Shown in pieces: positions 11,741 through 62,900 of a DNA stretch of 64,000 bases. Origin of the DNA: Asterias rubens (Eukaryota); assembly GCF_902459465.1 (NCBI RefSeq), contig NW_022985699.1, positions 62,001 through 126,000 on the forward strand. The letters are read 5' to 3'. Positions within the stretch are counted from its first letter, which is position 1. Every line of letters begins with the position of its first letter. A model generated the notes under the pieces. That model was not told where the DNA came from, searched no databases, and saw only the letters and a program-made list of their open reading frames with translations. The position numbers and the translations under genes are program-made.

Positions 11741-12011
11741 GTCTCAATCAGTACTTTGGAAAGTCAGGGTCGATGTGTGTAGTCCATGCTGATAGCCCTC
11801 CTCTGATATCCTTGATAACTGCTGGAACAGAGGCTAGCTTCTCTAGTAGCGTCTTCACAGCAATTTGTGAATTTAGGTCTTGTCTCAATCAGTACTTTGG
11901 AAAGTCTGGGTCAATGTGTGTAGTCCATGCTGATAGTCCTCCTCTGATATCCTTGATAACTGCTGGAATGGAGGCTAACTTCTCTCGTAACGTCTTCACA
12001 GCAATTTGGGA
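11741..12011 (-). repeat. 141-bp tandem duplication of the MOCS3 C-terminal coding region and stop
   Basis: 11741 aligns with 11882. The second copy encodes [40 protein letters not shown] with TGA at 11750-11748. Confidence 0.95.
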
Positions 12012-15000
12012 ATCGTTGCCTTGTTTACACACCACAAACACTGAAACAGAGAGACATAATTATAGAAGATAGAATGTAAAACAAATCATTTATAAATTTG
12101 ACAAGATAATCTGATGAAATTATTATTTTGTATCATGGTGTTTCTGATCAGCAGAGAGTGGGTTCAAATCCCAGTCGTGACACCTGGGTCCTTAAGCAAG
12201 ACACTTAAGCATGTTGCCTCGTCCTTCGGATGGGACGTAAAGCTGTTAGTCCCATATGTCGCGTAATACACATAAAAGAACACTTATCGAAAAGAGAAGG
12301 TGTTTGCCCCGGTGTTCCTGGTTTAGTGCCACAGCACCTTGTAAACCATTACATGGTGCTCTAGATGTAAAAGCAGTAGATCTTAATACAAACATAGTCC
12401 CACATTCTTTCAGGACAATGCTGTATGTTCGAGCGCCTTGAGCGTCACTTATGGGTATGCGCACTTTATAAGAAGCCACTACTTATTTATTTATTTGAGG
12501 TTGTCTGGTGTCTGTACCTCATACTGTACATCCATTTGATCGTTGCTTTATTTATATCACAAACGTTTTATGCGTGGACTTTCTACGTTACCTCTGGTTT
12601 GAGTCGATGTCTTGCTTCTCTTGGACACCTCCTCTGTAATTAGGTCCAGAGACTTGGATTTGTTCACTTCATCAATCGGAATGTCTGACTCGCAAGTTTA
12701 AGGACTAGTAATAAACCAATCATCATTACATGGTCGTTGTCATAAAGTTTGCATCTACACACCTAAACTGTTGGACCCTATGGTGGTACATGTATGCCTA
12801 ATCCCATGTAAAGCAATAATCAGTTTACTAACTCGTTCAGTCCTCAGTCCAACACCATTCAGTAACTCAAACAACCAAACTGTTGGACTCTGATTATGGT
12901 GGTATGCCCGATCCCATGTAAAGAAAAAATCAGGGCCCAATTTCATAAAGCTGTTAAGCAAAAAGTACCACTTGAAGCTTAGCAAAAACTGAGTGGGGCA
13001 CCAGTCACAACAATGTAAACTTGATTTACTTTTGGCTGGCAGCCTGTTTCTGTTGAGCAATACTTTTCTGTGCTTAGCAAATATTTCTGCTTACAGGCTT
13101 TACTAGTGCAGTTTACTAGTGCAGTCCTCAGTCCATCACCATACAGTAACTCAACACCCAAACTGTTGAACTCTTATGGTTGTATGCCTGATCCCATGTA
13201 AAGCACAGTCAGTTTACTAGTGCAGTACGTAGTTCAACATAACCAAGTAAAACAGGCAGTTGAACTTTGAAGGGTTGGGGTGGGTGAATGAATGATTTAA
13301 ACATCTGATTTGCAAGGATACTAATAAAATTTGGCAATCTGCAGATCTCAAATTCCACTGCAGGTCTGACATCAAGTAAAACTGGTACATCGTCGATATT
13401 GTCCTCTCGTAAAACTACCGAAAGGTCCTTCACACTCACTCGATCTTCAGCTGATAGAAGAAGAAGGCTAATGCACTGCAAAAACAAAAAGAACACCCTT
13501 GCATACACAAAACACTATGCTGAGGTCACGCACACATTTTTACTGCATATTTTTACGCACAAAGAACGGCTATTGTCCAATGATCTGCCTCCTTTTGGCC
13601 TCGGAGATGGCTCTCTTTGTGACATTGTACGCAAGGGGTTTATAAAATTAATTGTTTTAGGTATTTTTTGTGGCATTCTTGGTTGAGCGGTCTAGTTCAC
13701 CGGACCCAAGCTGTGGTGTTGTCAGCAGTAGAGTGTTGGTTCGATACCCAGTCGTGACACTTGTGCACTTGAGCGAGGCACTTAACCATAATTGCTTTGT
13801 AAAAAGTTGGGGAGGTAGTGCATTCGGCTCTACCAGCCAGGTTCCTAGTGGATGATACCCATGCCTACATCTTTACATACTGTGAAGGGGGTCTACCTTT
13901 AAGCTCTTGCAAACAAAACCAGCCTTCTAGGTCAACTGAAGTGACAAATGGTCATTTAAATGTCAGAGGTCAAATGTCATGCTTACTTTATCAGTGGCAC
14001 TTGCTCCACAGAACTGTTCGTAATCAATGAGTTGATGAATGGTGGGGTTGTTACCACACAGGACACAGTTTGGTTGTCTCGGGCGGAGTTTGATTGTACA
14101 CAGCCTTCCGTCTAATGCGTCTAAGATGAGAAGCTTCTGACTGAACGACGCTGTGGAAATTTGAAAAAGTTGGAATAAGTTTCCTTAAAAATAGCTAAAT
14201 TGGCCAACATTTCAAAAGTGGTTTGGACAGAAAGTAAGTAAGTGCCGAATGACTCATTTTGTCCCAAGTGAATGCTCAGTTGTATTAAAGAAAGCAATGC
14301 TATAAAATGTGGAATATTGTGGCGAGTTTTTACAGCATCTACATACTCTCAATTGGCAAATCATCTCGAACAAAGATATTGTCAAAATAGGGAGACCGCC
14401 AACATAGGGTTAGAGAGCTCAGATGGTGGAGCGCCGACACATTAGTTTGGGGGTTGTTGGTTCAAACTCCACTCTAGTAAATTTTTCTTTCTATTCAACC
14501 CAAAATCGAATTAAAATTTGAAAAACTTTTTGTCTCAAAAGTGATGAAGACCAAACCTTCTATTCCAGCAGCTATTTTCACTGCCTCTAAGGCCTGGAAG
14601 CAGCCAATGATTCCTGGAACTGTGAAAGAAAGATAAGAAAATGACTGCAAAACAGCAATATGGATTTCAATGGATGTGCGTTGTTGCGTCACCTTTCTGA
14701 TGACTAGAACTGCTGGCAAGCTAACCAGCCTTTTGTTTTGCCTATCAGTATTTACGTCGAGCGTATTTACGTCAAGCGTATTTCACAGGTTAGCAGGGAG
14801 TGTTTGTTGTGTGTGTGTGTGTGCACTCCACATTACTAGGCATACAAATTCGCTTACACAGCTAGCACAGACATTTTGCACTTGATGATCAGAGAATGGT
14901 GAACGTAAGCGCAGAATTTGGCTGTAAGAGCATAAAATTGGGCCCTGTGCTAAAGGCCATTCTATGTTTACTAGATAGAAGACATCTCCCCTGTACATGG

Positions 15001-18000
15001 TGTTTGATACTAGCCCAAGAACAACACAGCCTAAGAGTAATTTTCGTTTTACCTACTCCTAGGACTCCACCTGATGAGCAGTTAGTGACTGTTTCTGGCG
15101 GAGGTGGCTTGGGATACAGACATCTGTAGCATGGACCACCATTGTAGTTATAAATCGTCAGCTAAAACATAAGAAAAAGGAAAACCACATTGATACTAAT
15201 ACGTACCTGCTTTTTGATAGATATCTACCGGCGTGTCAATGTGCTTATTACTATTTATTTCCAGGCAGGTTATTGAAGTTTTTGAATGATGAGACCCTTT
15301 CATGTCAGGTTTACAAAGTACTGCGGTGCTTTCAGCAGCCACTGCCAAAAACACAGCGACAAACCCTTACTCGTAGTGATAAGTGTAGCTGTTTTTTTTG
15401 ACATTACACAACACACAGGACCAACCGCTATAGGTCCATACTGAAGGACAAAGCAGTAATGGTTCTTGCTAAAGGACTGGACTCGAACCCATACTCTGCT
15501 GATCAGAAACACCAGAGCTTGAGTAAAGTGTGCTTGACCGCTTGGCAATGACACGCCAACACAATGTCTTGGGGCAGATGTTTACAGAAGTACAATGTGT
15601 TATGACCGCTTGGCAATGACACGCCAATACAATGTCTTGGGGCAGATGTTTACAGAAGTACAATGTGTTAGATTAACAAATAATTGTCAAACTATCCGAG
15701 AAAGTCTGGTACCTGTCCTTCAAATCTGAGCGCACTCCCCGAGACCAGCGGCTTCCCTGCCAAGACACAGGCATCGTTTAGGAGATAACGAGTCGCCACG
15801 TTGTCAGTGCAGTCAAGCACTATGTCATATGTGAGCTGACAGGTTGCATTAAGGCTGTTCTGTAAAAGATTTTGCCCTTATGGAAGGTTTATGTTTGGTA
15901 ATCTCTCGTAAAATTAATGACAATAACAGTTTTTTTCTAAGGATGTAGGCAAGGGTATCATCCACTATGAGGCTGCCTGGTAGAGCAGAGTGCACTTTCT
16001 TCGAAGCAATTATAGTAAGGTGCGTTGCTAAAGGTTTCAAATGACATGAACTGGATTCGAACCCAAGCTTGGTGAACTTGACTGCTTGGCCATGACAATG
16101 ACATGACTTACGGTGTGAACATGCTTATATTTTCCAAGTATTCAAAGGATATTTCTTGATGACATCCATTGCATTCCCGCTGTCTAGTTGCATATGGTGA
16201 GGTACGCAGACAACCGCTGAATTTAATCTAAGCAAATAAAAACCAAAGAAATAATTATAAAAATTGGTACTGGTATTTTTCTACATTTTGTTGATATTGT
16301 GTACGAAAAAGCCTTTGGAGCACTACGATTGCCCACATTCTGTAAACTACATAACTTGATTCCTTCCTCCTAGACTGCCTGGCCACGATACCACATCCCA
16401 AGTAGGGTAACATTGTATCATGGACAGGAGCGCTGCTGGCCCCCGAGAGCCACCTCTCCGACGAGTGTAACGCTCGTGGGAGACGGAGCGCCGCTGGCCC
16501 CCACGAGCCACCTCTCCGACGAGTGCCTCCGACTCTGCACTTTGCCGTGCACCCAGAACACCGTCTTTCCACCAAGTCGGGGCCCCGTGCCGGGCCCCGA
16601 CTGCAGTCGGGCGAGAGCCCTGCAGCCCTCCTCGACCCAAGAAAGAAAGATACACAGAGCCTGAGATGTATACCTTGAAACACTTGCAGAGATTGATTGT
16701 GATTTAGGTCTTCCGATTCTATCCTCGGTGTGAAGAATCTGTCGATGGAGGTTGCCCAACTCTACCTCATCATAGTCCACTACACCGAGCTGGCCTGCAT
16801 ATCAAAACATTCAAATTGTCAGTACTGATGTTAAAGCTGCATCGGGGATAAAGAATATTATGTGGTATTACCACTGTGAAACTCTGTACTTTCCTGAGGT
16901 CTGTGAACAAAAATCACAAGCATATTACTCGGGTGGGATTCGACCTTTGCCAATGTAGAGCAGATGTTTATACTAGTTGTAATAAGATGTCTGCTCTAAA
17001 TTATATTCCAAGCCCGACTTTTAATGGTTGTAAGTCATCTGACTGGCACCCTTAACAAAGACAAAGACATGGAGACCGCCAACAAAGGGCTAGATAGCTC
17101 AGTTGATCCCAAGGGTTGTTGGTATGAGTCCCAATCTAGTATTAAGAGTTGGGGAAGATCCGAGTATATCTGTAAAACTGAAGAATTACACCTGGTTTTT
17201 TTTAACATCATACATCAAAAGACACAAGCCCTTAGCAAGAGCATACCTATCCCTGCTGCAGCCAGGTAGATGGCTGCAGGGCATCCCAGTCCACCTGCAC
17301 CAACAATCAGAACGGAACTGTTACATAACCTCAGCTGACCTGAAAATAACAAATAACAAGGATTAATACGAGTTCTTATACACAGTACTTTGTTCTCAAG
17401 ATGAGCATCTGGGCACTTTGTCCTTGGATTGGGCGCCGTTGAGCTCTGTTTGTTTGATGTGAATTTGGTGGGAAAGATATTTTCCAATATTGTGGAATGT
17501 GAGTAATTTCATGACAGAACACAGTCCGATATTTTGTAGAAACAAATTCTATTCTACAACCCAAAAAGGCTGGACTGAATATTCCACTGGTTGTAGTTCA
17601 AGAGTCAGATTTGTGTGTTTTTAATCACTACTCACTAATTAAAACACACAGTATTTTTGTGCCCGAGCAACTTTTAAAAAGAATAACAATTTCACCTTTG
17701 ACACCAATTTCCGGGAGGATGAGCTGTCGACTGTATCGCTCTATGCTGGTGTTGTCAAGCTTCTCTTTTTTTGTCTTGAAATCAGATTTAGGCAACTGAT
17801 GTTCCACATTATCTCCCTGCACCTTAAAAATTAGTGAACATAAAAATTAGCTCTTGCAAACTGCTTACCAACACCCAAAAACCTATGGTATAATTGCAAA
17901 ATATAGCATGGCCTGTTTCGACCCCAGCAGTCTTTTTCAAGACAGACTCTGCCAGGGTCAAAACGTCTTTAACTATTTTTGGTGAAAAAAAAACTTCACA

Positions 18001-19097
18001 AGATGTGCAATACATTACAAATTTAAAGTATTTGTCATGGCATAAAGGCCAAGACTTAGAGGCAACCAGAGACCATGCCCTCCAGGCCATGGCCCTCGTC
18101 TAATTCCAGCCCTGAAAGATTGGGGTCCTACTACTTGCCGTCAACTCACTTGCGCCGTCAACTCGCCGTCAACTCCTCTAAAATACATTTAAAATCCACA
18201 AAAGAAGCATAGAACTGTAAAGTATCAGCTCAAAGAGAATTCGCGTTAGTTTTAGGTCATATTTCGGAATAAAATTTGAGTTTTTTTCTCGTGACAAAAA
18301 TTATCTTAAAGCAGCAAAACCGTCGACCGCCATCTTGCTTTTTTCACATTGATTAGTCTTGGCCCAAGATGTCAATGATTGGTACTTTTTTTTATTAACA
18401 CAAAGTCGTTTTTGTGAATGAATTTTTACCGAAAACCATGAGAAATATGTAGTTTAGCCCAGACTTAACACTTCCGTGTCCCTTTTATAGATTTTTCATG
18501 TAAACTTAATGAGTTGACGGCGAGTTGACGGCAAGTCGGAGAGTTGACGGCAAGTAGTAGGACCGAAAGATTGTGGGTAGCGGTACAAGTGGCACTATCA
18601 GGCCTGTATGCTTCGTTTTTTAAAGGAAAGGGCACCAAGGCATTTTCTCCTTGTTAAAGGAAACAAAATTGTAAATTTCTACTGGAGCATTTCAAGGGCA
18701 CCAAGGCAATGACCAATCGCCTTCATTGCCTCCTTGAAGTATCGGGCAATGGTGCTGGTTCCAAACTTAGAACATGCTAGAACCGGGTAACTGTTGGAAC
18801 CCCCCCCCCAACATTGGAACCCCCCCCCCAGCCTTCTTGCAAAAACAATTCATTATAACTTAGAAAGTGAACAGTCAGGGCAGAGAATCCTAGTATAGTT
18901 ACAATAATTCGCCGGAGCCTTACAATTATTGTAACTAAGAGGATCCTAGTCCATAAATTAATACTTACTCCCTCCAACTTTCTTGTACTTGTTTTTGGGC
19001 CGTCTTGTTCGCACAGTCTTCTCTTCAGTACGTTGATTTCTTTGTGAGCTTCAGCTAGCTGAGCTCGCAGCATCTCCAGTTCACTCTGCTCAGCCAT
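11889..19097 (-). CDS. MOCS3: Adenylyltransferase and sulfurtransferase MOCS3/UBA4 (465 aa, 12 exons)
   Basis: Exons 19097-18969, 17822-17696, 17339-17247, 16794-16674, 16227-16153, 15830-15713, 15161-15053, 14619-14557, 14150-13987, 13475-13322, 12684-12592, 12040-11889 (1398 nt, all phases consistent). Motifs: [64 protein letters not shown] zinc site, and rhodanese [24 protein letters not shown]...DPDFPKY*. Confidence 0.96.
12685..13321 (-). other. U12-type GT-AG intron (MOCS3 intron 10)
   Basis: 5' site GTATCCTTG; branch TCCTTAAAC at 12704-12696 close to CAG; no pyrimidine tract. Splicing gives PNFI-N-IPID. Confidence 0.88.
15831..16152 (-). other. U12-type AT-AC intron (MOCS3 intron 5)
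   Basis: 5' site ATATCCTTTG at 16152; branch-like GCCTTAAT at 15855-15848; ends in AC at 15832-15831. Splicing gives VIK-K-YDIVLD. Confidence 0.93.
18123..18564. mobile_element. Mutator/foldback-like non-autonomous element in MOCS3 intron 1
   Basis: TIR GGTCCTACTACTTGCCGTCAACTC with three GCCGTCAACTC-type subrepeats per end; exact 9-bp duplication GAAAGATTG at 18114-18122 and 18565-18573. Confidence 0.85.
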
Positions 19098-19764
19098 TTG
19101 TTGAATTGGTGACAACTTCTATTCTAATATAAATTGTAAAACAAAACTATTTTTGTTGTAAAAAATTGTAAAAATTTAACAAAAGAACTAATGAATCAGC
19201 AAGTGTAACACAAGTACCAAGTAGAAATAACTAAGTAACTAATCAACCAAGTAAGTAAACAAAACATAAAGTCAGTAGTGCCGATTTCATTATAAGAAAA
19301 TGTAAACAAACCCACATGGCATGTTTGGATGGCCATGTCGTGTGGGTTTGTTTACTTTTTCTTTTTAGTAGCGTTGGTTGAATCTGGAAGCATTAACTTG
19401 AAATGTTTTAATAAATCGAAACCAGCATTTTAATAATTAACATCAGACGGTAGCCAATGAATCTATATCTCATCAATACTATGATTTATAGGCATAATAA
19501 AAGCTCTATACAAGCCGCAGTCAAGTACTAAAAAGTTGTTTCTTTTACCTTCACATGGAGAGCGCCATCTTGAAATACCGCCCTCTCTTGACAAATATTG
19601 TGCCAATTTGAATGACTTGCACCTAGACTTCCATCACGATCAACCAAGCGTTGATTGGTCCAAGTCACAGACTAAAATGAGAGCCCATACTTTTGCATGC
19701 ACACAAGTAGAGCAGAACATTCATTACTGTCTTCGGTTATTTTTGCTAACTTTATTGTCAAAAT
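19098..19764. promoter_or_regulatory. Putative bidirectional promoter, MOCS3/MRPL48
   Basis: Divergent ATGs 667 bp apart. YY1-type CGCCATCTTG at 19563-19572; CCAAT at 19454 and ATTGG at 19654. Confidence 0.55.
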
Positions 19765-42198: not shown

Positions 42199-42317
42199 GG
42201 AGATTAACCCTCCCACCGTGGGTTCCATTCTCCAGTTGAGTTGACCAACCACTTGAAGCCTTTAAACAGTGTGGGTTGTGTGTACAGGCAATTCCATGCT
42301 CAGAACTAACTCTTTAC

Positions 42318-47900: not shown

Positions 47901-50900
47901 TGATTGTAAAAATGCTTTTAAGTTTGATCTTAGCCGAGGCAGGTGACTGTGCTGGTAACCTCTCCTCTCTTCAAATTTGTTTTTTTTTGGGTCATTTTTA
48001 TTGTGATTCTAATTGCAAACTTGTATTTGCACTGTTGATATTCATTTTAATTGTACACACCTGCGTACTGTGTTGATATTTTGCTTGCAGATGTTTGTGA
48101 TTCTCATTGCAAACTTGTATATTTTGCACTTTTGATATTTATTTATTTGAATTGTATGTCTGCATTGATATGTTGCTAGCAGATATTCTGTATAGAATAT
48201 TGATTGTAAAATGCTTTGAAGTCTGATCATGACCGGAGGTTGAATAAGTTGCCTCTCCCGCTCTTCATTTTGTGTATTTTGTCATTTTTATTGTGATTCT
48301 AATTTCAAACTTGTAGGCCCCTAGGTATTTGGACTTTTGATACTTATTTTAATTGTACGTGCCTGCATATTGTGTTGATATTTTGCTTGCAGATTTCTGT
48401 ATGAAAATGTTGTGTATAGTGTTGTTCAGTGCTTTATTTGTATTGTCACACTTTTATTGTCATGTTTGTACTTTTATGACTTTTCAGTATTGTGTTCTTG
48501 AACACCTTGTGTTTGAGGGAGCAAATACTTCATATCTGGTTTTTATTGCTGTTGTTATTGCTGACTTTTTTCTTGCATAATTTACTTCATCATATAATTT
48601 TCATTATTCCTGTTGTCACGCCTGCCTCCATCTTAGTCTTGTTGCAAATCGTTTTGCAAATAGGAACCAGACTATTTTGTTCTTCCAGCCTCGGTTTTGT
48701 AACATTAATATCAACTGGAGAAATTCACGATGGTGGCACTATGATAAAAGTCTATTGTGATAATCCTTTTAGTTAATTATTTTGTTTACTGTGTTGTCTT
48801 TTTGCAAAGCTATATTTGAAAAGGACTGTTCGTGTAGCTAACTGTTGTAATTTTATGTTCAAGATGGCGATTGTGCGTATTTACTGCACACCATCGGTGT
48901 TCACAAAATTTGATTGACATACTTCCGTGTTTTTGTTCCTCAGAAACTACCATCTGTATAATAACAGGTTCATGCAGTACGTCCTCTATTTCTTTGTGTT
49001 TGTGATACTCATGCTGGCCATATTTGAAGAGCCTGCAGTCAATGGTCTGAGCATGCCTTACTGGGTAAGTCATGCATTTCTGTTTTTTTATTTCTTTTTT
49101 TTTTAATCTAAAATTGAATAATTGAGCCTCAAGAAAACTTAAATGTCAATTAAAGGCAGTGGAAACTATTGGTAATTACTCAAAATAATTATTGGCATAA
49201 AACCTTTCTTGATTACGAGTAATGGGGAGAGGTTGATGGTATTAAACTTTGTGAGAAATGGCTTCCTCTGAAGTGACATAGTTTTCGAGAAAGAAGTTAT
49301 TTTCCACGAATTTGATTTTGAGACCTCAGATTTAGAACTTGAGGTCTCAAAATCAAGCATCTGAAAGCACACAACTTCATGTGACAAGGGTTTTTTTTTC
49401 TTTCATTATTATCTCGCAACTTCGATGACCGATTGAGCGGCAAATTTTCACAGGTATATTATTTTATACATATGTTGAGATACACCAACTGTGAAGGCTA
49501 GTCTTTGACAATTACCAATAGTGTCCACTGCCTTTAAGTTAATGACCAGGGACTAATTTCATAGCACTGCTTAGTAGTAAGCACATTTTCATGCTAACTA
49601 TGGCAGGGGGGTACCTCTACTGGACTTCTGGAGGCAAAATATATGGGTGTGTTAAAGTAATGGAACATTTGGTGTGGGGGCCCCCACACCCTCTGCAGCA
49701 AATCGGGCATGGTATAACTATATGACACACCAAAAACCTGGCCATAACCACTGATTATCAAAGTTGTTAAACTTGATCAATTAGTTGGGGCTTTGAGTTC
49801 TGTAATCAAATTTGTATTTTCATTCCTGACTCGTTTCTATCTATTGCACTTTAATTATTTGTATGCGTAGAGTACCCACGTTCTGGAGCTGGCCTGCTTG
49901 GCGTATTTCGTCTTTCGAATGCGTCATCATCGATCCTTCACACCGAGGAGAATATGGTGGACAGATGCTAAGAACATTATACTAGTCGTTGCTATCAGTG
50001 TAAGTACCTCCCTATGTTTGTTGTGTTTCTCATTTCTCAACCTAGCCTTGCTCAAGGCAGTCGGGAATATTCACTCTGAAGAAGGCCACCGCTGTAAAAA
50101 CCCGCCATGTAATCACATCGCACAACATGACGCCCCGTACACTATCCGCATGCGGAGGCCGTATTAAGTGTTGGCCTGACGGCCTCCGCATGCGAATATT
50201 TGGTACAAGTGCGGATGAATTGTGCACAAAACAGCGGGGGCTATGAGCGATTTGCCAGTGGATACGAGTGGGTTTACAACGGCGTCTTTTTCGGAGTGAA
50301 TAATGCGACTGCCTTGAGCAAGGCTATTCTCAACCGTGTTCTGTCCAATCACACACTAACTGTTAAAGGCGCTAGACACTATTGGTAACAACTCAAATTA
50401 ATTGTTAGCATAAAAACTTACTTGGTAACAAGCTATGGAGAGCTGTTGATGGTATAAAACATCTTGTGAGAAATGGCTCCCTCTCAAGTAACTTAGTTTT
50501 TGAGAAAAAGAAAATTTCTCACTCAAATATTAAAAGATTTCAGGCCTGAAGTCTTTTTTAGGCATCTGAAAGCACACAAATTTATTCAACAAGGGTGTTG
50601 TTTCTTTCTTTATTTTCATGCCACTTCCATGACCAATTGAGAACAAATTTTTGAAGTTTTTGGTATGCATATGTTGGGATACACTAAGTGACAATACTGG
50701 TCTTTGACAATCACCCAAAATTTGTTTTTGTTTGCAGGTGATGTGTGTGGATATGATACTAATGACCGTTCTAGTGGAGACTGGAGTGATTGAGAAACCC
50801 TTCCGCTGGTCCAGAATGCTCAGACCGCTCTTCCTCGTCAACTTCCCTGAGATGAGAGAGGTAAAGATTCAATTTGTCAAGTTTTTAAACAGGTTGTTGT

Positions 50901-53900
50901 TTAACCCTCCTACTAATTCCCTGAGATGAGAGAGGTAAAGATTCGATTTGTCAAGTTTTTAAACAGGTTGTTGTTTAACCCTCCTACTAATTCCCTGAGA
51001 TGAGAGAGGTAAAGATTCAATTTGTCAAGTTTTTAAACAGGTTATTGTTTAACCCTCCTACTAATTCCCTGAGATGAGAGAGGTAAAGATTCAGTTTGTC
51101 AAGTTTTTAAACAGGTTATTGTTTAACCCTCCGACTAATTCCCTGAGATGAGAGAGGTAAAGATTCAATTTGTCAAGTTTTTCAACAGGTTATTGTTTAA
51201 CCCTCCTACTGTTTGACCCTTCAATATTGTCCCCTTTGCTCATTATATATGATATTCCAGCCTGCAATACATGTTCAAAGTTGTCAAGTTTTTAAACAGG
51301 TTATTGTTAACCCTCCTACTGTTTGACCCTTCAATATTGTCCACTGTGCTTTTTAAATAGTGGATGAACTATGCCAGTCTGCAGTATGATACACTGTGGC
51401 AATGAAAAAAACAGTCAAGCCTCCAACCGTCCGACCATTTAATTTCATCCTCTTTGTTTTTGAATAAGGGAAATAAAAGTGCATGAAAGGTGCAGCTCCA
51501 GTGCACCTGGACTCTGCATTGAATTTCTATGTCTGTGTTGAGTGCTGAGTGGCTCCTTGCGAAAGTTTTAAACCTGTGCACTAAAGTTTAAAATTTGTGC
51601 ACATAAACGTTAAATTTGGACGCTCAGAACAATCATCTTATTAGTCCTTGTACGCACGTCACACGCGGGGACTGTGCTACGCTCACCATTTTGATGGTCA
51701 ATAGGTTTCTGTGTAAAGGCCACGTCGCCTAAAATGCGCACTTCACTGATTAACGCACAGTGACGTTGACCACAAAAATGGCGCCACGTCGCCTAAAATG
51801 CGCACTTCACTGATTAACACACACTGACATTGACCACCAAAATGGCACATCCAAGATTATTGATGATGGCGTCAGGTGAATTGGGTCAATTGGGGGGTTC
51901 TTTTTTTTTAACTGAATACAGTCAGGTCAAGTTTATCACTAACTGACTTCCAAAATTTTAATTCCGTCACAGCTTGAAATTTGACGCAGGTTATCTTACA
52001 TGTTTTATGGTCTTCATGTGATACAACAATTTAACATGCCAAGTGATAAACTACAAGGAAAACTGACTGGGTAAAGTTTAATGAAATTTTGGGATGAACA
52101 AAGAAAATTTTACCAGAAACTTCCTGTCATTTTTCAACTTGTTTCTTCTTCTAGATCCGGCGCTCATTCCGTAATATCCGCCACTCACTGAATGAGATTC
52201 TAACCGTTCTGATTCTTCTGTTCTTAATTCTCTTCTTGTTTGCTCTTCTTGGCCGGGAACTCTTCTCCGATGAGTAAGTAGAACTAAATTGGTAATTGTT
52301 TGTTCTCATCCTTATACTGTGGCTGTGCTGAGATGTAGAACAATGAGCTACTCCAGTAGCTTTTTCCCTCGTACTTCATCTCTTTGGAACTCCTTGCCTG
52401 GTGCATGTTTCCCTTCATCCTATAGATGATCTTCCATCTTTTAAAGGCAGTGGACACTATTGGTAATTGTCAAAGACTAGCCTTCACAGTTGATGTATCT
52501 CAACATATACATAAAATAACAAACCTGTGAAATTTTGAGCTCAATCGGTCATCAAAGTTGCGAGATAATAATGAAAGAAGAAAACACCCTTGTCACACGA
52601 AGTTGGGTGCATTTAGATGGTTGATTTTGAGACCTCAAGTTCTAAACTTGAGGTCTCAAAATCAAATTCGTGGAAAATTACTTCCTTCTCCAAAACTATG
52701 GTACTTCAGAGGGAGCCGTTTCTCACAATGTTTTATACCACCAACCTCTCCCCATTACTTATCACCAAGAAAGGTTTTATGCTAATAATTATTTTGAGTA
52801 ATTACCAATAGTGTCCACTGCCTTTAAGAGGAATATCAATTCCTACCTTCAGCTCCTCCTTCTTCCTTGTAGCCCTTTACCTAGATTGGCTTTAAGCCTT
52901 GTTTTGGGCGAACTTTTTTTTTTTTTAAACATGGTTGAAAATGAATTACTGATAGTTCAAACCTGAAGATATTACTTGTGTCTTTCTTATAACTAAACTT
53001 CAATAGCAATTATCAGTGTAACTACTGTATTGTTTTTCATGATGAAGCAGTCTGGCACTTAAAACTTGAGGCCTTGTTTTTAGAGTGTGCTTTCAAATCC
53101 CGCTTATGACAAGAAAGTTAACAACAAACACGTTTCTTAAACCTTAACCCTCCCAAGTTCTAGTCATGAAGTTGTAGGATTGTACATTAGATGATTGAGA
53201 GCGAAATAACAATTTGCACTACGCAATTCACAGTCAACCCTTCTACTGTTTGACCAGTTAATATTATCTACTGTGGGGGCGTTACAACTAAACAACTTTG
53301 AGGTGTATTTTAAAGTGAAATGTTTTACATAGTAGTTTTTTTTCCTTTTGTAGCGACCTGAAAGAAGTTCTATCATCGGAGCCTTACTTTGCACACTACA
53401 TTGAAAATATCTGGGAACTGTATATCCTTGTGACTACGGCCAACAGTCCTGACGTCATGTAAGTAGACAGACATGAACTCTGCCTAATTTCATAGAGCTG
53501 CTTAAGCAGAAAATACTGCTTTAAAAGTCTCTGCTAAGCATGATAACAGCCACAAGTTGTACATTGTTGAAGTGGGCACAACTTGGTTAGTGCGTATGGG
53601 TTTGGTTGGGTTAGGTTGGGTTTTACTGGCTTGGCTTGGATGGGGTTTGGTGAAGTTAGGATGGGTTTGCACAGTTGGGCCACCATAGGGCCTATACAAT
53701 CTGCAGTCAAATAGTTTTGAAGGATTGCTCAACTTAGAAATATAAAGTTACCCACCACCTCCTTTGACTGAACTAACCTAAGATCTAACCTGTGCCTTGT
53801 TTATTTTGTAGGATGTCAGTGTATGACCGGAATAGATTCTGCTGGGTTGAAGTGGGTACAACTGGGTTAGTGTGTATGGGTTTGGTTGGGTTTGGTTGGG

Positions 53901-56900
53901 TCAGGTTGGGTTTTATTGGCTTTGCTTGGATTGGGTTTGGTGTAGTTAGGATGGGTTTGCACAGTTGGGCCACAGATGGTTTTAAAGAGTCGGGCAACTC
54001 AGAAATAGATAACACCATGTTAAGTACCAACCTTCTTTGAACTAAACTAAGATCTAACCTATGTCTTCTTTACTTTGGTAGGATGTCAGGGTACGACCAG
54101 AATAGATTCTGCTGGGTTGAAGTGGGTACAACTGGGTTAGTGTGTATGGGTTTGGTTGGGTTAGGTTAGGTTAAGTTGGGTTAGGTTGGGTTTAATTGGC
54201 TTGGCTTGGGTTTGGTGTGTAGGATGGGTTTGCACAGATAGGCCACCATGCTTAATCAAAGCAGTTAAATGGTTTTGAAGGGTTGGGCAACTCAGAAATA
54301 GATAACACCATGGTTAGTACCAACCTTCTTTGAACTTACCTAAGATCTGACCTATGACCTTATATACTTTGTAGGATGCCAGCCTATGACTGGAATAGTT
54401 TCTACATAGTATTCTTTGTGATCTTCGTCTTGCTGTGTAATTACATCTTTATGAGTATCTTCCTTGCTGTTATATACAAGAACTACCGAAAACATCTCAA
54501 GGTAATTAAACTTTTGTTTGAAACTTTTTTTTTTTTCTTTTCTTTTAAAGGCAGTGGACACTATTGGTAATTACTCGAAATAATTATTCACATAAAACCT
54601 TACTTCGTAGGGAGTAATGGGGAGAGTTTGATAGTATAAAACATTGTGAGAAGCGGCTCCCTCTGAAGTAACATAGTTTTCCACGAATTTGATGTCGAGA
54701 CCTCGGACTTAGATTTTGAGGTCTCGAAATCAAACATCTGAAAGCACACAACTTCATGCGACAAGGGTGTGTTTTTCTTTCATCATTATCTTGCAACTTC
54801 GAAGACCAACTGAGCTCAAATTTTCACAGGTTTGTTATTTTATGCATATGTTGAGATACACAAATTGAGAAGACTGGTCTTTGACAATTACCAATAGTGA
54901 CCAGAGTCGTTAAATGTTTTCTTTAAAATTTGTATCACAATTAACTGATTTTAAGGACACACGTATCACGACTGGGACTAGTAGAACCCACACTCTACTG
55001 ATCAGAAATTCCAGAGCTTGAGTCCAGTGTGCTTGACCGCTCAACCACGCCATGTGACAAATAATAATATCAGATTTTCGCTGCACAGAACGAAGTTCAG
55101 ACCTCAGTGTTTCTGAAAAGAAGGAAGCTCGCCAAGGCGTGGGACATCCTGAAAGTCACAGTTGACAGCAAGTTTGTGCTGACGTGGGAGCGATGGAGAG
55201 CAGTGATGAAGTTTGTCATTCCAAAACACAGTGACATGCAAGTACATCTGCTGTGGAAGGTTCTTGATAACGATGACAATGGATCAGTTGGTGAGAGACA
55301 TTGAATGTTTTTATTGGGTTGTAGTGGGTTGAAGTGGGCACAACTGAGTGGGTGCAGGTGGGGTGGGGAGGGTTGGGTTGGGTTGGGTTGGGCTTTGTTT
55401 TGGGTTGGGCTTGGCTGGGTTATAATGTGTTGGGTTTTGGTGGTGTTGGGTTTGGTTTGGTTTGGTTTGCATTGGTTTGGGTTGGGTGTAGTTGGGTTTG
55501 GGTGGGTTGGGTTGTGTAGTATGGTTGAGTTTGGCTGGGTTTGGGTTGCACTGGTTTGGGTGGGTTGGGTTTGGATTGTATTAGTTTGGGTTGGGTTGCA
55601 CTTGGTTGGTTTGTTTTTGTTTTTGTATGTTCATGCTTATGATATTTTCTTCCTCACTCTTAAGTCTAGCAAATCCCTCTTCGATTGAGTGCATTATGTT
55701 TATGGATCCTAATGCTTTATCCCTCAGCCAAATGGGAGTTCCTACGCATTGTAGATCTCCTCAGTGTTAAGCTCTCGACCATCAACCAAAGCATGCCATT
55801 CTTCCAGAAGTATATGGCCACATGCTACAACTCTACACTCAGCGAATTCATCTGCAAATATGTCAAACATAGGTAAGTAGTTCAACCCATTTCTGTCTAA
55901 CTTCAAGTTTACACTTCATCTCAAGGAATCTTCGATCAAGTTCCATGCTTGTCCTCATTGAACTATAGTCTTGACACTCCTGCAGTGATAGGTATTTTTC
56001 TTCAGCTGCGCCACGCATCTGGAACTCTCTACCACTTAATCTTAGATCTTGTCTTTGTACCACAAAATTCAAACCTCTTCTCAAAACCGATCTTATTGTC
56101 ATGTTTGAATGTGTTGTGTTTTACGGTATACATTTACCTATAGTCGAGTTCCGGAGCCCAATCAGTACAAAGTGACACGATGTTGACTTGCTGATGGCTG
56201 GATTCGGACTATCACCAGCAGGGCTACACAAGGCTGCCTCGCTAGCGGTCACGCCCTAGTGGTTTATTACGTAACTGATAATAATGTCAATTCACTACAA
56301 ATGTTTTGTTCATATTTCCTCTGATGTGTCATTCGTTCAGATACTTCCGCTTCTTCTTTGACTTTGTGATCATGATCAATGCGTTTCTGATCATCGTCAA
56401 GGTTGATGAAGCAGAGTGGTACTTCTTGGGCATCTTCATGTTTGAGATCCTGATCAAGATGTACGTCTATGGTTTCTACAAGTACTTCAAAAGCGCTTGG
56501 AATGTGTAAGTAATCCTGCAGTGTTGCAGTACTCATACTACTCGATTACTACTCGGGTGGTACCTGAGTATCAAATAGTACTTGAGTACTATTCGGGTAC
56601 TACTCAGATAGTACTCAATTACTACTCCAGTAGTACTCAAATACTCTTTGTGTACTACTCGGGTACTACTGGAGTATTCAATATTTTTTGCTTATATTTT
56701 TTAATGGTGTATTTTTCTTAAACTACTTACTACATGTATGTAATTTTGTTATGCCGTTTTTAATGTTATGCGCCCTCAAACAGGCTGGTCCTGGAGAGAG
56801 CACAATACAAAACCAATGAATTATTATCATTATTATTACATATTTTTTCTCTTGTAGATTTGACTTTGTAATTATCACTGTAGCCTTTGTAATCAGCGCC

Positions 56901-59900
56901 ATAGAGGAAGTAGTACAGCAAACGTCAAGTAAGTTGTTTTTACTCTTTACTCTGGTTTTAATTTTGGGCCACTTTTTTTCTAACTTGACTCTTAGATAAT
57001 GTGTTTCTTACTATTAATTTGACAGTTGCGCTAATGTGATAAGACTTTTGAACGCTAAGAGTTTGGCTCTGGCTTGGAGTATAGCTCTGCGGCTTAGGAT
57101 CTGGCTCTGGCTAAGCGTGCCACTTTGGCTTGGGCTCTGGCTCAGGCTTATTTATTGTTTAAGGCTCTCCCGTTACAAACCGTGGCTTCTTATGTTAAGC
57201 AGCCATTGTTGTATACTCCTGTTAATATTTGTATTATTCTTTACTTATGAAATAGGTGAAGAAATTTGTACAAATTAAATGAAAGTAATGTGTGTATTTA
57301 CAGGTTAAATTCTTTGTTAGCTGCTCATTTCATTGTGTTTTTGGTTGTCTTGTTACCCTTTTTATGGTTGGAGTCTGATTCATAATATCAGCGTACTTTT
57401 ATTGAAGTTTATAGTAATTTTGATGTTCATTTTATACATTTGTATGCGTTCTTGATTGATTGAATTTTGGTGGTTTTTATTTCTAGTGGAATCTTTCAGT
57501 GTTCATTGTATGTATATTTATGATGTCTTAATGAATTGTTGATTCTCATTGTGTAGATCTGTATGCCTGATTGAATGATTTAATGGCATTTTTTGTGTCA
57601 TATGGAATTGTTATTGTTAAGCCTTATAAGATGGCAAGGTGCTACATAATTGAGTCTTAGAATGTATAACTTCAATATCTTATCTTTCTGTAAAATATGT
57701 ATATTTTTTTTACTTTAGTAACTTGTTGGTAGATACATGTACGTGTGTTATATAAGACTTTTCACACATGTCTGAAGGAATATGCTATATAAGACTTTGA
57801 TATTATTATTATTATTAAATATTGTTATTGGTTATCATGCTATTATTAGGATTATTGTTATAATAGAGTGGTAGTTGTAATCGAAAAATGTATCTACAAG
57901 TATTTTGTACTGCCTTAAAGCCATTATACACTTTCGGTAAACAGTATTGTCCAAGTCCCACACTTCGTGTATCACAACTTATATATAAAATAACAATCCT
58001 GTGAAAATTTAGGCTCAATCGGACATCGGAGTCGGGAGAAAATAACGGGAAAACCCACTCCTGTTTTCGCGCGTTTCACCGTGTCATGACATGTGTTTAT
58101 AACAAATCCGTAATTCTCGTTAACGAGAATTTATATTGTTTTACCGTTTTCTCAAAAAGTAAAGCATTTCATGGACTAATATTTCAAGAGAAGTCTTTCA
58201 CCACTACCTTCTGTGAACCCTGTAAATTTTTTGTAAATCTGTGAACTTTTTTTTTTTTTCCTGTACCGAAAGGGTCCAATGGCTTTAACTCTTGTAGTGT
58301 GCACCATTTACTATTTCAGAAGATTTCACAGAGCCCACATTAGACTTTCTCCTAGTCCTCAGAGTGTTGAGAATCTTAAGAGTCATTGGAGGCATTGAAA
58401 GGTGAGTTTTGTGAACATGTCAAGTTGAGTGCGCAAACATTTGATAAAAGGACTTACAGCATGCATTTTGAATTTCGATTGTGATGATTTTTATGCTGTT
58501 GTAGATTTTTGTAATGCGCTTTTGAACATTTTATGGTGAAATGTACATAATAAATGTGGTTTTGTTATTTTTATTATTATTTCTCTTTTTGTGGACAGGT
58601 ATCAAGTCATTATATCCACCATTAGCAACATCGGTCCGTCAATTCTAACGTTTGGTGGCGTCTTATTCGTAAGTTCTTAGTCGAATGTCTATGTTTGTCA
58701 ATAAGGTATTTATGAGTTCAATTTATATAACATAAGGTACAATTCCTGATCCCTATGGATTGCTAAATTGAAAGTCCTCTGGCCAATAATACTGTTGGTA
58801 TGTCATATGGTCCGTTGCAAGCTTTTGTATAGCAACCTTTTTTTGGGGGGGGGGGGGTATCATCTGCCCAATGTCGGGCATGGAATACTCTACAATTTTA
58901 CAGTTCAGATAGATTGTTTACTTTGTTAAATTTTTATACATCTTTATAAACATCATCATCATCAGTCGGCTGCACAGCATGTGGACACAAGCTTTTCCCA
59001 TTCTCTCCTGTCTTGTGCTATTCTCTGAATCTCAAAACGGGAAGAGCAGAAAATCCGCGGAGACTAATCTTCCTACGTATGTACTCAGGGTACAGCAGGC
59101 GCTGACGTCCTTGTTTGCGCCGGCCATGCGATGATAAACATAGGCATTTGAAAATATTATTTGTATAATTTGCTCTTGTTTTGCTTTATAGTTGTTTCTA
59201 CAGACCCATCTTCATGACCACATCTTCATTCAGTGCATTGCAGAGAGTCCACTTCAGCATTCCATCCTGCACACCATCATCAGCTACAGGTTCATGATAA
59301 CACATTTAACCTTAACCCCCCCCCCCCCTCTCCCCCACCCCTCAACACGTCCTCAGATTTAAATAAACTTACACAGTTTGAAAACGATGATTGTAGAAAG
59401 CTCCCCTTGAAATATAACGTGATGAGTACTCTAGCTTTTAAGAAATGACTAAAACAGTTTCATAAAAATAATTTTTGTCTCAGTTTTTAGTATGGAAACG
59501 TGTTTACCAGTATGGTGTAATTTTCATAACTGGTAACCACGTTTAATATTAATAATAATAATAATAACAAATTCTTATACAGTGCATTTCACAATAACCT
59601 TATCAATGCGATTTACATAAGTGCCCTGGTCGTAGCACAAATAACATCCCTTTTATCTTTCTCAGCTCCCGTGGGAGTATACAGCCCCAAGCTGTCGTGG
59701 CGCGCCAAAGGCTTTTTTATAGACAATATCAACCTCTACCCATACACCCACACAGGTACCCATTTATACCCCTGGGTGAAGAGAAGCAATTATAGTATCT
59801 TGCTAAAGGACACAAGTGTCACAACCAAGATTTGAACCCACACTGTGATTACTTAGCACCAGAACTTGAAATTGATGCTCTTAACCGCAAGGCCCTGACA

Positions 59901-62900
59901 CATGCTAAAGTATTTTTTGTCTCATGGAGACAAAAATTATTTTTGTGTGACTTGTTTAGTAATTTCTCAAAAATGAAAAGCACCTCAGCAAGTAATATCG
60001 TACTAACTCGCAAGAATGCATGTTGAATGTCCCCAACTTCCACATATGGTTCAGAACACTTTCCAATGCTTCACACACATATCAGGAATGTAAACTAATC
60101 TCAAAGGCTGATTGCCACAGAATCTCCCCTAAATCCATTTCTAATTTATTTTAAGAAACCCCCAATCCGCCTCAGAACTCATACCTGTTTTTAACATCAG
60201 CACTCTCTAGTATCAACTAAAACTTACATTGTCATTTGTAAGACTTCACACATCACAAGAACAATAGATTTACATGGTAGTCTGGTAGTAAATCAGCCTC
60301 AACACCAGTGCCTGCATGGTAGATGAAGACAGGGGACCAGACTAGGTAGTAGCTCAATGACCTTTCACATAGTTTTATTCAATCTTTGACCTTTGACCTT
60401 TGACCTTTGACAGGTTATCTTCTATGTGTTTGCCGTCATCGGTATGGGAATATTCCGCAGGCGGATTACCTTCTACGGTTACCTACCCGACAACGCGTAC
60501 ACGGACCCGACACAACTCTACTGCGGGACGGGCATCGCCAATTTCACCAAGTCGGAATTCTACAACCACCATTACTGCAGCAACAACTTCAACGACATCA
60601 CCAAGGCCTTCGTTGTGCTGTTTGAGCTGATGGTGGTCAACCAATGGCATGATATCCTTTGATTACAGGGAACCAGTGAATGACCTTTAACACTAGTGTT
60701 AATTTTTATAGGCTCTTTTTCACAAACAAAAAGTTAAAACCATGAAAAACGGATTAGTCAGCTGATGTGTTTATTCACCATTCCATCGTGTAGCCTGCAC
60801 AGGCAAACACTTTATTTAAGGGGCAGATGTAACTGGAATTCATGCTGAAAATCTCCCTTTGTCAAGGGTTATTGTGTTATCCCTGATCGAGGACCATTGT
60901 CCTTTTGTTATACAAATGAGGATGACAAGATCAGACAGCTTTAATGGAATGAAAACTTAATAAAATTTGGTGTTCTGTTTTAATATCAAAGAAACCTTCT
61001 CTTTGGTCCTTAATTGTTCACACTGATTGCCGATGGCTTTGTTCTCGTCACGCATAAAGCGGCGAGGATTTACTTCCTATCCTTTCATATCGTCATGGTG
61101 GTGATCATCGTCAAGTAAGTAAACGCAGCCATTTATTGGAAAATTTTGCGCTCAGTTGTTACCACAGACTTATGGATCTGGTTGGCTCGGTGTTTTCTTT
61201 CCCTGCCTTTCATCTCTGTGGACCCCAGTTCAAACTCTGTCTCGGAGCGAGCCTTTGCGCATAGATTGGGTTTTAACCCCAACGAGGGCCTAATTTCATA
61301 GAGCTGCTTAAGCAGAATGTTTTGCTTACTTTGTGCTTAGCAGAAAGTAGCAGGACACCAATCAAAAATTGTGTATGTGACATGGTATTTTGGCTGGTAA
61401 CTTTATTCTGGTAAGCATATGTTTTGGTAAGCATATATTTGTAGGCTAAGCAACTTTTTTGTGCTCTGTCTGAGTTTTCTCTATTTTAGATTTATTTAGA
61501 TTTATTTTAGGTGTTCCCCCGCATTTTGAAACTGACATGTTTTCATCTTCTGTTTGCAGCTATCAATAAAGAAAATGCATTGTTATGAAGGGCTTAAAGA
61601 ACCAAGTTAACATGGTTTGCTTGAGGACCTTTGTTGCTTGTTATGCTCTTGATTTGAGTGGGAAAACTCAAGTTGTATTACTGCTGTTATAGTACCGCCA
61701 TGACTTAAGTGATCACACTAAAACAGTGTCAGGGAATTTTGTGTTTCCCTTTTTGTAAAATGTTTCCTCTTTCGGTCAAAGACTGGTCTTTGAAAATTAC
61801 CAAAGGTGTCCAGTGTCTTTAAAGAACCAAGTTGAGCTCGAGGACCTTCGTTGCTTGTTATGCTCTTGATTTGAGTGGGAAAACTCAAGTTGTATTACTG
61901 CTGTTATAGTACCGCCATGACTTAAGTGATCACACTAAAACAGTGTCAGGGAATTTTGTGTTTCCCTTTTTGTAAAATGTTTCCTCTTTCGGTCAAAGAC
62001 TGGTCTTTGAAAATTACCAAAGGTGTCCAGTGTCTTTAAAGAACCAAGTTGAGCTCGAGGACCTTCGTTGTTTGTTATGCTCTTGATGCTCTTGATTTGA
62101 GCAGAAAATTTCAAGTAATGTATTATTGTCAGTATAATTACTCATGTGGTGATACTTAAAAAAGCATCGAGGAATTTTGTGTTTTCCTTATGACGATGTT
62201 TCCTTTTTCGTTTTTTTTTTGTTTTGGACACAGCATCTTCATTGCGTTCATCCTGGAGGTGTTCATGGTGGAGTATTCGCTCTCTAAGAGTAAGTACGAG
62301 GGCGCTATTGAGAAGAAGATTGATGAGCTGGGGCTGGGAGTTGACCTGTAAGTATCTTGCTTGGTGTAGCAGGAGATTCATACTTTTATCATGAACGTTT
62401 TGATGTACTATTACTGCATTTATATTTACCTTTTTTTTGTTGTCTGGTCAAAATGTGTTCCTTGTTCATCATAAATTTGGTTGTATTTTCATATATTTTT
62501 CATGAACATTTGAATGTTGTACTATTACTGCATTTATGTTTTGATGTTCCTTTTTATCCTGGTCAAAATGTGCTCATTTGTCATCAATAATTTTGTTGTA
62601 TTTTCATATTTATCATATGCATGATAATCATCCTACTTTTAAAGTGGTATTGTTCTTTTTGTCTTCTCTTTTTTTGTCTTTCTTCCATGGTTGCCTCGCC
62701 AGTTAGTTTAAAGTTCTTTGCATAGCTAAGGTTATGGGCCTCTGTCTCCTAAAGAGCTCAAAACATTACCAACGCCAGCAGGGATAGGCCTACATGTATG
62801 AAATATGTAACTTTTAGTACTCTGTTGGCGGGACAGACACATCCCAAAACTGTGGATCGGGCACTGGCCAGGACCCAATGTCATGGCTCTGCTTACCGCC

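What the first reader, a model, noticed from the sequence alone, without database searches (positions are those of the whole stretch)
12685..61023. Cluster of minor-spliceosome introns: five U12 introns in three neighbouring genes
Seen in sequence: five of the ~48 introns rebuilt here carry the U12 5' site RTATCCT plus a CCTTRAC-like branch close to the 3' end. They are MOCS3 intron 5 (AT-AC) and intron 10 (GT-AG), VASH introns 2 and 4 (GT-AG), and TPC3 intron 15 (AT-AC). Each restores a conserved protein motif. Established: U12 introns are well under 1% of introns in the mammalian genomes studied and can be rate-limiting for expression. Inference: about 10% locally suggests either a lineage that kept many U12 introns or a neighbourhood co-regulated through the minor spliceosome, linking Moco/tRNA thiolation, tubulin detyrosination and endolysosomal channels.
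Basis: partly seen in the sequence, partly recalled or inferred. Interest (0 to 1): 0.7.

Follow-up and report, generated by a model that had tools for sequence, protein, structure and literature searches.

The report
Five real minor-spliceosome introns, neighbours by chance
Three neighbouring sea-star genes really do carry five rare "minor-spliceosome" introns, but at least four are ancient introns also found in distant animals, so their closeness looks like coincidence, not a regulatory unit.

Summary
All five introns exist at the stated coordinates. Each has a U12-type 5' site, a TCCTTRAY-like branch site 10-18 nt from the 3' end, no pyrimidine tract, and a frame-preserving junction.

- **MOCS3:** RNA contigs from four public runs show both junctions.
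- **VASH:** both junctions leave exactly one Pfam profile position for each split codon. They match the two minor introns catalogued in mouse and human VASH1 and VASH2.
- **TPC3:** the AT-AC intron sits at the same codon in another sea star, in a zebrafish-type TPC3 and in a third assembly. About 70 of 150 related database proteins read straight into RTATCCTT there.
- **MOCS3 intron 5:** it is U12-type in three other animal assemblies.
- **Genome:** it encodes U11, U12, U4atac and U6atac.

These are retained ancestral introns, but the one sea star named in a published survey has vertebrate-like minor-intron density. Nothing supports co-regulation.

Rough odds: three minor-intron genes in one window is expected 0.3-5 times per genome. 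Two double-U12 genes side by side is rarer (about 0.02), but that estimate is post hoc.

The scan has noted single U12 introns elsewhere in this genome, but not this cluster.

The parts
11890..19097 (-). MOCS3/Uba4-type gene (ThiF adenylyltransferase plus rhodanese), 12 coding exons
   Evidence: The spliced CDS of exons 4-12 is open and ends ...DPDFPKY-stop. Pfam gives ThiF at 5e-14 on exon 6 and a weak Rhodanese hit on exon 10. RNA contigs X1 record 2 and X7 record 16 carry the spliced form. Exons 1-3 were read from ORFs.
15831..16152 (-). MOCS3 intron 5, U12-type AT-AC, 322 nt, phase 2
   Evidence: 5' site AAGAA|ATATCCTTTG; branch motif CCTTAAT 18 nt from ...CTCAC|. A joint of 322 nt appears in runs X1, X2, X3 and X7. 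Of the five cut positions the 4-nt ambiguity allows, only +4 gives AT..AC. The join restores ...[16 protein letters not shown].
12685..13321 (-). MOCS3 intron 10, U12-type GT-AG, 637 nt, phase 1
   Evidence: 5' site TTATTA|GTATCCTTGC; branch motif TCCTTAAAC 13 nt from ...GAGTCAG|; no pyrimidine tract. RNA contigs X1 record 2 and X2 record 4 run 13322-13475 directly into 12592-12684.
27719..34005 (-). Vasohibin (VASH) gene, about 9 coding exons; start codon putative
   Evidence: Pfam PF14822 hits exons 2-5 with E from 6e-5 to 2e-19. The last exon ends ...DYQIRI-stop. The six other introns begin GTTTGT, GTAAGC, GTCAGT, GTCAGA, GTAGGT and GTGAGT.
32324..32942 (-). VASH intron 2, U12-type GT-AG, 619 nt, phase 2
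   Evidence: 5' site GCTGCA|GTATCCTAAAC; branch motif TTCCTTATC 15 nt from ...AAATCAG|. Pfam profile runs 47-75 then 77-94, with position 76 as the split Gln codon. The exon end (..GCA|GTATCCT) matches the catalogued mouse and human VASH1 minor intron.
30853..31691 (-). VASH intron 4, U12-type GT-AG, 839 nt, phase 2
   Evidence: 5' site TTTCATT|GTATCCTTTT; branch motif TCTTGAC 12 nt from ...CTTCAAG|. Pfam profile runs 96-119 then 121-170. The position (AVILx|x-YLTN) matches the mouse Vash2 minor intron CAT|GTATCCTCT.
44977..64000 (+). Two-pore channel 3 (TPC3) gene, coding exons 1-18; runs off the window end
   Evidence: tblastn of P0001 (825 aa) covers residues 1-776 in 18 exons. P0001 matches PDB 6v1q (TPC3) at 5e-178, against 8e-63 for TPC1 and 4e-50 for TPC2. 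Sixteen of the 17 introns are GT-AG, mostly GTAAGT.
60652..61023 (+). TPC3 intron 15, U12-type AT-AC, 372 nt, phase 1, just after the domain II filter motif VVNQWH
   Evidence: 5' site GGCATG|ATATCCTTTG; branch motif GGTCCTTAAT 10 nt from ...GTTCACAC|. This was the best-scoring junction against P0001. The same intron is in L005, L006 and L007.

Best explanation
These are five ordinary U12-type introns removed by the minor spliceosome. U11 and U6atac read the /RTATCCTT 5' site. U12 reads the TCCTTRAY branch site close to the 3' end. At least four of the five are ancestral: the two VASH introns and the TPC3 intron date at least to the deuterostome ancestor, and MOCS3 intron 5 is shared with other animals. 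They have simply been retained in this sea star. That the three host genes are neighbours is most likely coincidence, not a functional or regulatory unit.

Shown here: sequence signals, frame continuity, RNA junctions for MOCS3, and conservation in other taxa. Inferred: actual dependence on the minor spliceosome, and that the adjacency is due to chance.
For: - **Signals and frames:**
- **RNA:** four runs carry both MOCS3 junctions. The other MOCS3 joints are plain GT-AG.
- **Profile continuity:** each VASH junction leaves one Pfam Vasohibin position for the split codon.
- **Known counterparts:** MIDB Table S1 lists two minor introns each for mouse and human VASH1 and VASH2, and Table S2 gives their 5' sites (GCA|GTATCCTCT, CAT|GTATCCTCT, ACA|GTATCCTTC). 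These end on the same exon ends as here (PMC6717393).
- **TPC3 conservation:** the same G|ATATCCTT...AC| intron is in L005, which is assembly GCA_001949145.1 (Acanthaster planci from my memory of the accession). It is also in L006 (GCA_029721355.1) and in L007, whose product P0046 matches zebrafish TPC3 structure 6v1q over its full length at 1694 bits.
- **Read-through signature:** of 150 cluster representatives hit by exon 15, 49 continue NQWH-DIL, 9 continue -GIL and 14 continue -SIL, -NIL or -HIL. These are translations of x|RTATCCTT.
- **MOCS3 intron 5 elsewhere:** the same position and phase is U12-type in L010 (AAA|GTATCCTTA ... TTTTCTTAAC..CAG|). It is also U12-type in L011 (CA|GTATCCCTG ... 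TTTCCTTAACTATTAG|) and L012 (TTTCCTTAAC + 11 nt ending AC|).
- **Machinery:** the genome has U12 (126 bits), U6atac (124), U11 (92) and U4atac (90). U12 carries GTAAGGAAAA and U6atac carries AAGGAGAGA.
- **Lineage density:** Asterias rubens is comparable to vertebrates (PMC10639083).
- **Gene-level odds:** three minor-intron genes among 3-6 genes gives 0.3-5 expected windows per 418-Mb genome.
Against: - No RNA junction evidence for the VASH and TPC3 introns (one read-laying run was allowed).
- VASH intron 2 has a weaker 5' site (GTATCCTA) and branch site (TCCTTAT).
- MOCS3 intron 10 was not traced in any other species.
- At the intron level the coincidence is not trivial. Two double-U12 genes plus a third minor-intron gene among six genes has a rough expectation of 0.02 per genome under independence with human parameters.
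- No genome-wide permutation could be run.
Confidence: 0.85

Rival explanations
1. The neighbourhood is a functional unit. Minor-intron genes are kept together so that limiting minor-spliceosome activity co-regulates Moco/tRNA thiolation, tubulin detyrosination and endolysosomal channels.
For: Five U12 introns in 36 introns of three adjacent genes. The rough expectation for two double-U12 genes plus a third minor-intron gene in one window is about 0.02 per genome.
Against: - At least four of the five introns are older than any sea-star-specific arrangement.
- The genes lie on different strands and are separated by about 8.6 kb of repeat-rich DNA (MOCS3 to VASH) and by an ankyrin-repeat gene without a U12 intron (VASH to TPC3).
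- No known mechanism acts on minor splicing by chromosomal position.
- The estimate is post hoc, borrows human numbers, and the scan read 782 windows of this genome.
- From my own knowledge, human VASH1, VASH2 and MOCS3 are on different chromosomes.
Confidence: 0.06
2. The sea-star lineage is generally rich in U12 introns, so such local densities are common in this genome.
For: MOCS3 and TPC3 carry U12 introns here, while MOCS3 and TPCN1/2 are absent from the mouse/human minor-intron tables. The Chordata-Echinodermata ancestor is estimated at about 1.25 times the human density in aligned genes (PMC10639083). The scan noted other single U12 introns in this genome.
Against: The same survey states that Asterias rubens has a density comparable to vertebrates, about 0.3%. 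In this window the other genes and the other 31 introns of the three genes are U2-type.
Confidence: 0.05
3. One or more of the three GT-AG introns, most plausibly VASH intron 2, is in fact spliced by the major (U2) spliceosome despite its U12-like motifs.
For: VASH intron 2 has GTATCCTA rather than GTATCCTT, and a branch motif with a single A (TCCTTAT) 15 nt from the 3' end. Minor-like and hybrid introns are recognised classes (PMC11347168).
Against: Its exon ends CA|, not AG|, and positions +4 to +6 are TCC, a poor U1 site. The orthologous mammalian VASH1 intron is catalogued as minor, with scores of 92 for the 5' site and 74-82 for the branch site. There is no pyrimidine tract.
Confidence: 0.1

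Closest known systems
Minor introns of mammalian VASH1 and VASH2 (MIDB; Olthof et al. 2019, PMC6717393)
   Same: Two U12-type GT-AG introns per gene. They sit after ...ELQ (exon end ..CA|GTATCCT) and after ...AVILx (phase 2 before YLTN), the same positions and phases as sea-star VASH introns 2 and 4.
   Different: This is a single sea-star VASH gene rather than two paralogues, and the intron lengths and branch-site spellings differ. Nothing is mechanistically different.
Conserved AT-AC U12 intron in domain I segment 1 of Cav and Nav channels (Fux et al. 2018, PMC6259924)
   Same: An AT-AC intron with ATATCCTTT deeply conserved in a voltage-gated-like cation channel gene.
   Different: The TPC3 intron lies directly after the domain II selectivity-filter motif VVNQWH, not in D1S1, so it is not the same intron. 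TPCN1 and TPCN2 are absent from the mouse/human minor-intron tables. I found no paper that mentions a TPC3 U12 intron.
AT-AC intron of AMD1 in the same sea-star genome (scan finding s1-150279)
   Same: An ordinary, ancient U12 intron retained in this genome and judged unremarkable by its follow-up.
   Different: That is a single intron in a single gene on another contig. I did not re-check it.

Membership tests
U12-type (minor-spliceosome) intron | 5' splice site /RTATCCTT directly at the exon end, unlike U2-type GTRAGT | tested here: met
   Four introns have exact RTATCCTT and VASH intron 2 has GTATCCTA. The other 31 introns of the three genes start GTAAGT or similar.
U12-type (minor-spliceosome) intron | Branch site TCCTTRAY-like about 10-20 nt from the 3' end, with no pyrimidine tract | tested here: met
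   CCTTAAT at 18 nt, TCCTTAAAC at 13, TTCCTTATC at 15, TCTTGAC at 12 and TCCTTAAT at 10. Two of these motifs are imperfect.
U12-type (minor-spliceosome) intron | Termini AT-AC or GT-AG with an in-frame junction | tested here: met
   Two are AT-AC and three are GT-AG. Joined translations are open and match Pfam or the orthologue.
U12-type (minor-spliceosome) intron | The junction is used in RNA | tested here: inconclusive
   Met for both MOCS3 introns in four runs of contigs. The runs are only guessed to be RNA, but they carry spliced forms.
U12-type (minor-spliceosome) intron | Removal depends on U11/U12/U4atac/U6atac | not testable with these tools
   Only the prerequisite was checked: one gene for each of the four snRNAs is present above Rfam cut-off.
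U12-type (minor-spliceosome) intron | Positional homology to U12 introns in orthologues | tested here: met
   VASH x2 against MIDB mouse and human. TPC3 in three other assemblies plus about 70 read-through proteins. MOCS3 intron 5 in three assemblies. MOCS3 intron 10 was not traced (one search gave one hit).
Non-random or co-regulated cluster of minor-intron genes | Excess over the genome-wide expectation, by permutation of classified introns | not tested
   No annotation or classifier was available for the whole genome. Rough binomial estimates are 0.3-5 windows per genome for three minor-intron genes and about 0.02 for the 2+2+1 pattern.
Non-random or co-regulated cluster of minor-intron genes | Coordinated expression or intron retention of the neighbours | not testable with these tools
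   Contig depth cannot rank expression (notes).
Two-pore channel 3 (TPC3) | Closer to TPC3 than to TPC1 or TPC2 | tested here: met
   The orthologue P0001 (66% identical in exon 15 and collinear over 18 exons) hits 6v1q TPC3 at 5e-178, against 8e-63 for TPC1 and 4e-50 for TPC2.

The most novel reading that the evidence does not exclude
Minor-intron genes, and in particular genes with two U12 introns, are physically clustered in this genome beyond chance. That would reflect either regional protection of ancestral introns from loss or selection for joint control by limiting minor-spliceosome activity.
Probability: 0.07. Interest if true: 0.55.

Novelty: new member of a known kind. Interest (0 to 1): 0.22.

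Why it matters
The finding mainly gives well-documented examples:

- **MOCS3:** it joins the minor-intron genes with two U12 introns. Mouse and human catalogues cannot show this because MOCS3 is absent from them.
- **TPC3:** it carries an AT-AC intron conserved from sea star to zebrafish-type TPC3, at the domain II selectivity filter.
- **Practical point:** many public gene predictions read through that AT-AC intron (NQWH-DIL...). This truncates or corrupts TPC3 models, so the signature can be used to repair annotations.

The proposed regulatory neighbourhood would be interesting, but nothing here supports it.

Tried and rejected
**Other RTATCCT(T) matches, rejected as splice sites**
- 53422(+) is coding (E-L-Y-I-L-V-T in the TPC3 domain I pore region).
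- 11806 and 11947(+) are the reverse complement of a duplicated piece of the MOCS3 last exon.
- 37032(+) and 2334(-) follow no open exon and have no usable branch or 3' site.
- 11508(+) lies outside any gene I found.

**Rejected splice site**
- An alternative 3' site for MOCS3 intron 5 at 15843 was rejected by RNA contigs and by frame.

**Searches that led nowhere**
- MOCS3 exon 10 relatives, to trace intron 10: one hit, 98% identical.
- TPC paralogues in the own genome using exon 15: only the query itself.
- Papers linking VASH1, TPCN1/2, TPC3 or MOCS3 to U12 introns: none.
- The species table in the Larue & Roy supplement is not held.
- A search for statements on U12 clustering gave nothing usable.

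**Look-ups that gave no genomic DNA**
- P0020 is not on record.
- The P0083 look-up was not sent.
- P0049 and P0075 loci are uninterrupted contigs without introns.

**Not attempted**
- A genome-wide motif count. By my rough estimate, chance pairs of 5' and branch motifs without coding context would outnumber real U12 introns.
Full report
**What the window is.** The window is contig 29, bases 62001-126000, of a 417.6-Mb genome. Earlier notes of this scan describe the genome as a sea star. I recognise six genes:
- a fucolectin/F5-8-like fragment (-, 1-2400);
- a PH-domain gene (+, about 7.7-9 kb);
- MOCS3 (-, 11.9-19.1 kb);
- vasohibin (-, 27.7-34.0 kb);
- an ankyrin-repeat gene (+, 35.3-41.2 kb);
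- TPC3 (+, 44,977 to beyond the window end).

**The observation.** RTATCCTT occurs 10 times against 4.27 +/- 1.87 expected, and none of 100 shuffles reached 10. The 7-mer RTATCCT shows no excess.

Four of the ten matches, plus one GTATCCTA, sit exactly at the ends of coding exons. Each is followed by a TCCTTRAY-like motif 10-18 nt before an AG or AC, with no pyrimidine tract. The introns are:
- MOCS3 intron 5, 16152..15831, AT-AC;
- MOCS3 intron 10, 13321..12685, GT-AG;
- VASH intron 2, 32942..32324, GT-AG;
- VASH intron 4, 31691..30853, GT-AG;
- TPC3 intron 15, 60652..61023, AT-AC.

The remaining motif matches are not splice sites. One is coding sequence, two lie in a duplicated MOCS3 exon piece, and the others lie in non-exonic sequence.

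- Long spliced contigs (X1 record 2, 1117 nt; X7 record 16, 1370 nt) run 13322-13475 straight into 12592-12684. That is exactly intron 10.
- The same contigs skip 322 nt between 15826(+4) and 16149(+4).
- Of the five cuts the 4-nt ambiguity allows, only +4 gives ATATCC...AC. This also rules out the nearer AC at 15843.
- Every other joint in the gene is CT..AC on the plus strand, which is GT-AG. Their 5' sites are GTATGC, GTATAC, GTACCA, GTAAAA, GTTTGG, GTAAGC and GTAACG, and their 3' ends are pyrimidine-rich.
- Exons 4-12 join into an open frame ending in the conserved C-terminus.

**VASH.** Exons 2, 3, 4 and 5 match Pfam Vasohibin at profile positions 47-75, 77-94, 96-119 and 121-170. Each junction therefore leaves exactly one position for its split codon. 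The other six introns are U2-like.

MIDB Table S1 lists two minor introns each for mouse and human VASH1 and VASH2. Table S2 gives their 5' sites as GCA|GTATCCTCT, CAT|GTATCCTCT and ACA|GTATCCTTC. These end on the same codons as here: Gln of ...ELQ, and the residue before YLTN (PMC6717393). The VASH pair is therefore already known and at least as old as the deuterostome ancestor.

**TPC3.** A search of 1.84 billion cluster representatives with exon 15 gave P0001 (825 aa). P0001 matches PDB 6v1q (TPC3) at 5e-178, against 8e-63 for TPC1 and 4e-50 for TPC2.

Aligning P0001 to the window gives 18 coding exons and 17 introns. Sixteen are GT-AG, mostly GTAAGT. Intron 15 is GGCATG|ATATCCTTTG ... GGTCCTTAATTGTTCACAC|, and the spliced reading is NQWH-V-IADGF, as in P0001.

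The genomic locus of P0001 is L005, from assembly GCA_001949145.1. From memory of the accession only, this is the crown-of-thorns sea star. It has the same intron (G|ATATCCTTTT ... TCCTTAAC..CACAC|). So do L006 (GCA_029721355.1) and L007. The product of L007, P0046, matches the zebrafish TPC3 structure over its full 773 residues at 1694 bits.

There is also an indirect signature across many species. Among the 150 best representatives:
- 49 continue NQWH-DIL;
- 9 continue NQWH-GIL;
- 14 continue -SIL, -NIL or -HIL.

These are the translations of x|ATATCCTT or x|GTATCCTT read through by gene callers. The intron is thus widely conserved and frequently mis-annotated.

It is not the known D1S1 AT-AC intron of Cav and Nav channels (PMC6259924). 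TPCN1 and TPCN2 are not in the mouse/human minor-intron tables.

**MOCS3 intron 5 in other animals.** Exon-sized ORF fragments 85-98% identical to exon 6 were found in many assemblies. Several carry the peptide translation of TCCTTAAC (F-L-N or S-L-T) a few codons before YD. DNA of three of them confirms a U12-type intron at the same position and phase:
- L010: ...IIKK, AAA|GTATCCTTA ... TTTTCTTAACAACCCCAG|A;
- L011: CA|GTATCCCTG ... TTTCCTTAACTATTAG|A;
- L012: TTTCCTTAAC + 11 nt ending AC|A.

The subtype differs among taxa (AT-AC or GT-AG), which is a known behaviour of U12 introns. Intron 10 could not be traced.

**Machinery.** The genome has one gene each for U12 (126 bits), U6atac (124), U11 (92) and U4atac (90). 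U12 carries the branch-site-pairing GTAAGGAAAA, and U6atac carries AAGGAGAGA.

**Is the clustering meaningful?** A pan-eukaryotic survey states that the starfish Asterias rubens has a minor-intron density comparable to vertebrates, about 0.3%. It estimates the Chordata-Echinodermata ancestor at about 1.25 times the human density in aligned genes (PMC10639083). So the lineage is not unusually U12-rich.

Using human figures (722 minor introns in 699 genes; PMC7507305 abstract) and independence, I get these rough numbers:
- three minor-intron genes among 3-6 genes in a 64-kb window: expected 0.3-5 times per 418-Mb genome;
- two double-U12 genes plus a third minor-intron gene among six genes: about 0.02 per genome.

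The second estimate is post hoc and borrows human parameters. It must also be set against the 782 windows of this genome, and many more elsewhere, that the scan has read.

At least four of the five introns predate any sea-star-specific gene order. The genes lie on both strands, with an unrelated gene and repeat-rich DNA between them. No mechanism is known that would couple minor splicing to chromosomal position. I therefore read the adjacency as coincidence (about 85%) and give a real, non-random cluster about 6-7%.

**Verdict.** These are new, well-documented members of a known kind (U12 introns in MOCS3 and TPC3), alongside the already catalogued VASH pair. Interest is low to moderate.

Noticed in passing
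P0027, P0033, P0111, P0020, P0062 and about 65 shorter proteins; L006:25137: Public gene predictions read through the TPC3 AT-AC intron (NQWH-DIL.. or -GIL..) and then truncate or go out of frame. This is a systematic annotation error at AT-AC introns, recognisable from the peptide.
   Followed up: partly
window 11741-12040 (RTATCCTT matches at 11806 and 11947): Part of the MOCS3 last exon (...AVIKDI...) is duplicated 141 nt downstream, behind the stop codon. RNA contigs cover 11800-11967 with two variant positions (11913, 11937). The scan also noted this as s1-150977.
   Followed up: partly
L010, L011, L012 versus window 15831-16152: The MOCS3 intron 5 position is AT-AC in the sea star and apparently in L012, but GT-AG with a U12 5' site in L010 and L011. 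That is subtype switching at one orthologous intron. L011 has the variant GTATCCC.
   Followed up: partly
window 12168-12351, 12720-13271, 15480-15663: Intronic stretches of MOCS3 have very high summed contig depth in all four runs (up to about 72,000), and many contigs run on into unlike sequence. These look like dispersed, transcribed repeats.
   Followed up: no
window 32845-32905 (-) inside VASH intron 2; 41735-41808 (+): There is a tRNA-like T-arm motif (GGTTCGAATCC on the plus strand) inside VASH intron 2. ARAGORN calls one tRNA-Ser(AGA)-like element at 41735-41808, probably SINE-related.
   Followed up: no
window 60380-60413: The 3' end of TPC3 intram 14 is a fourfold CTTTGAC repeat running into the acceptor (..CTTTGACCTTTGACCTTTGACCTTTGACAG|).
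   Followed up: no
window 19100-27700: About 8.6 kb between MOCS3 and VASH has no recognisable gene, only repeat-like ORFs.
   Followed up: no
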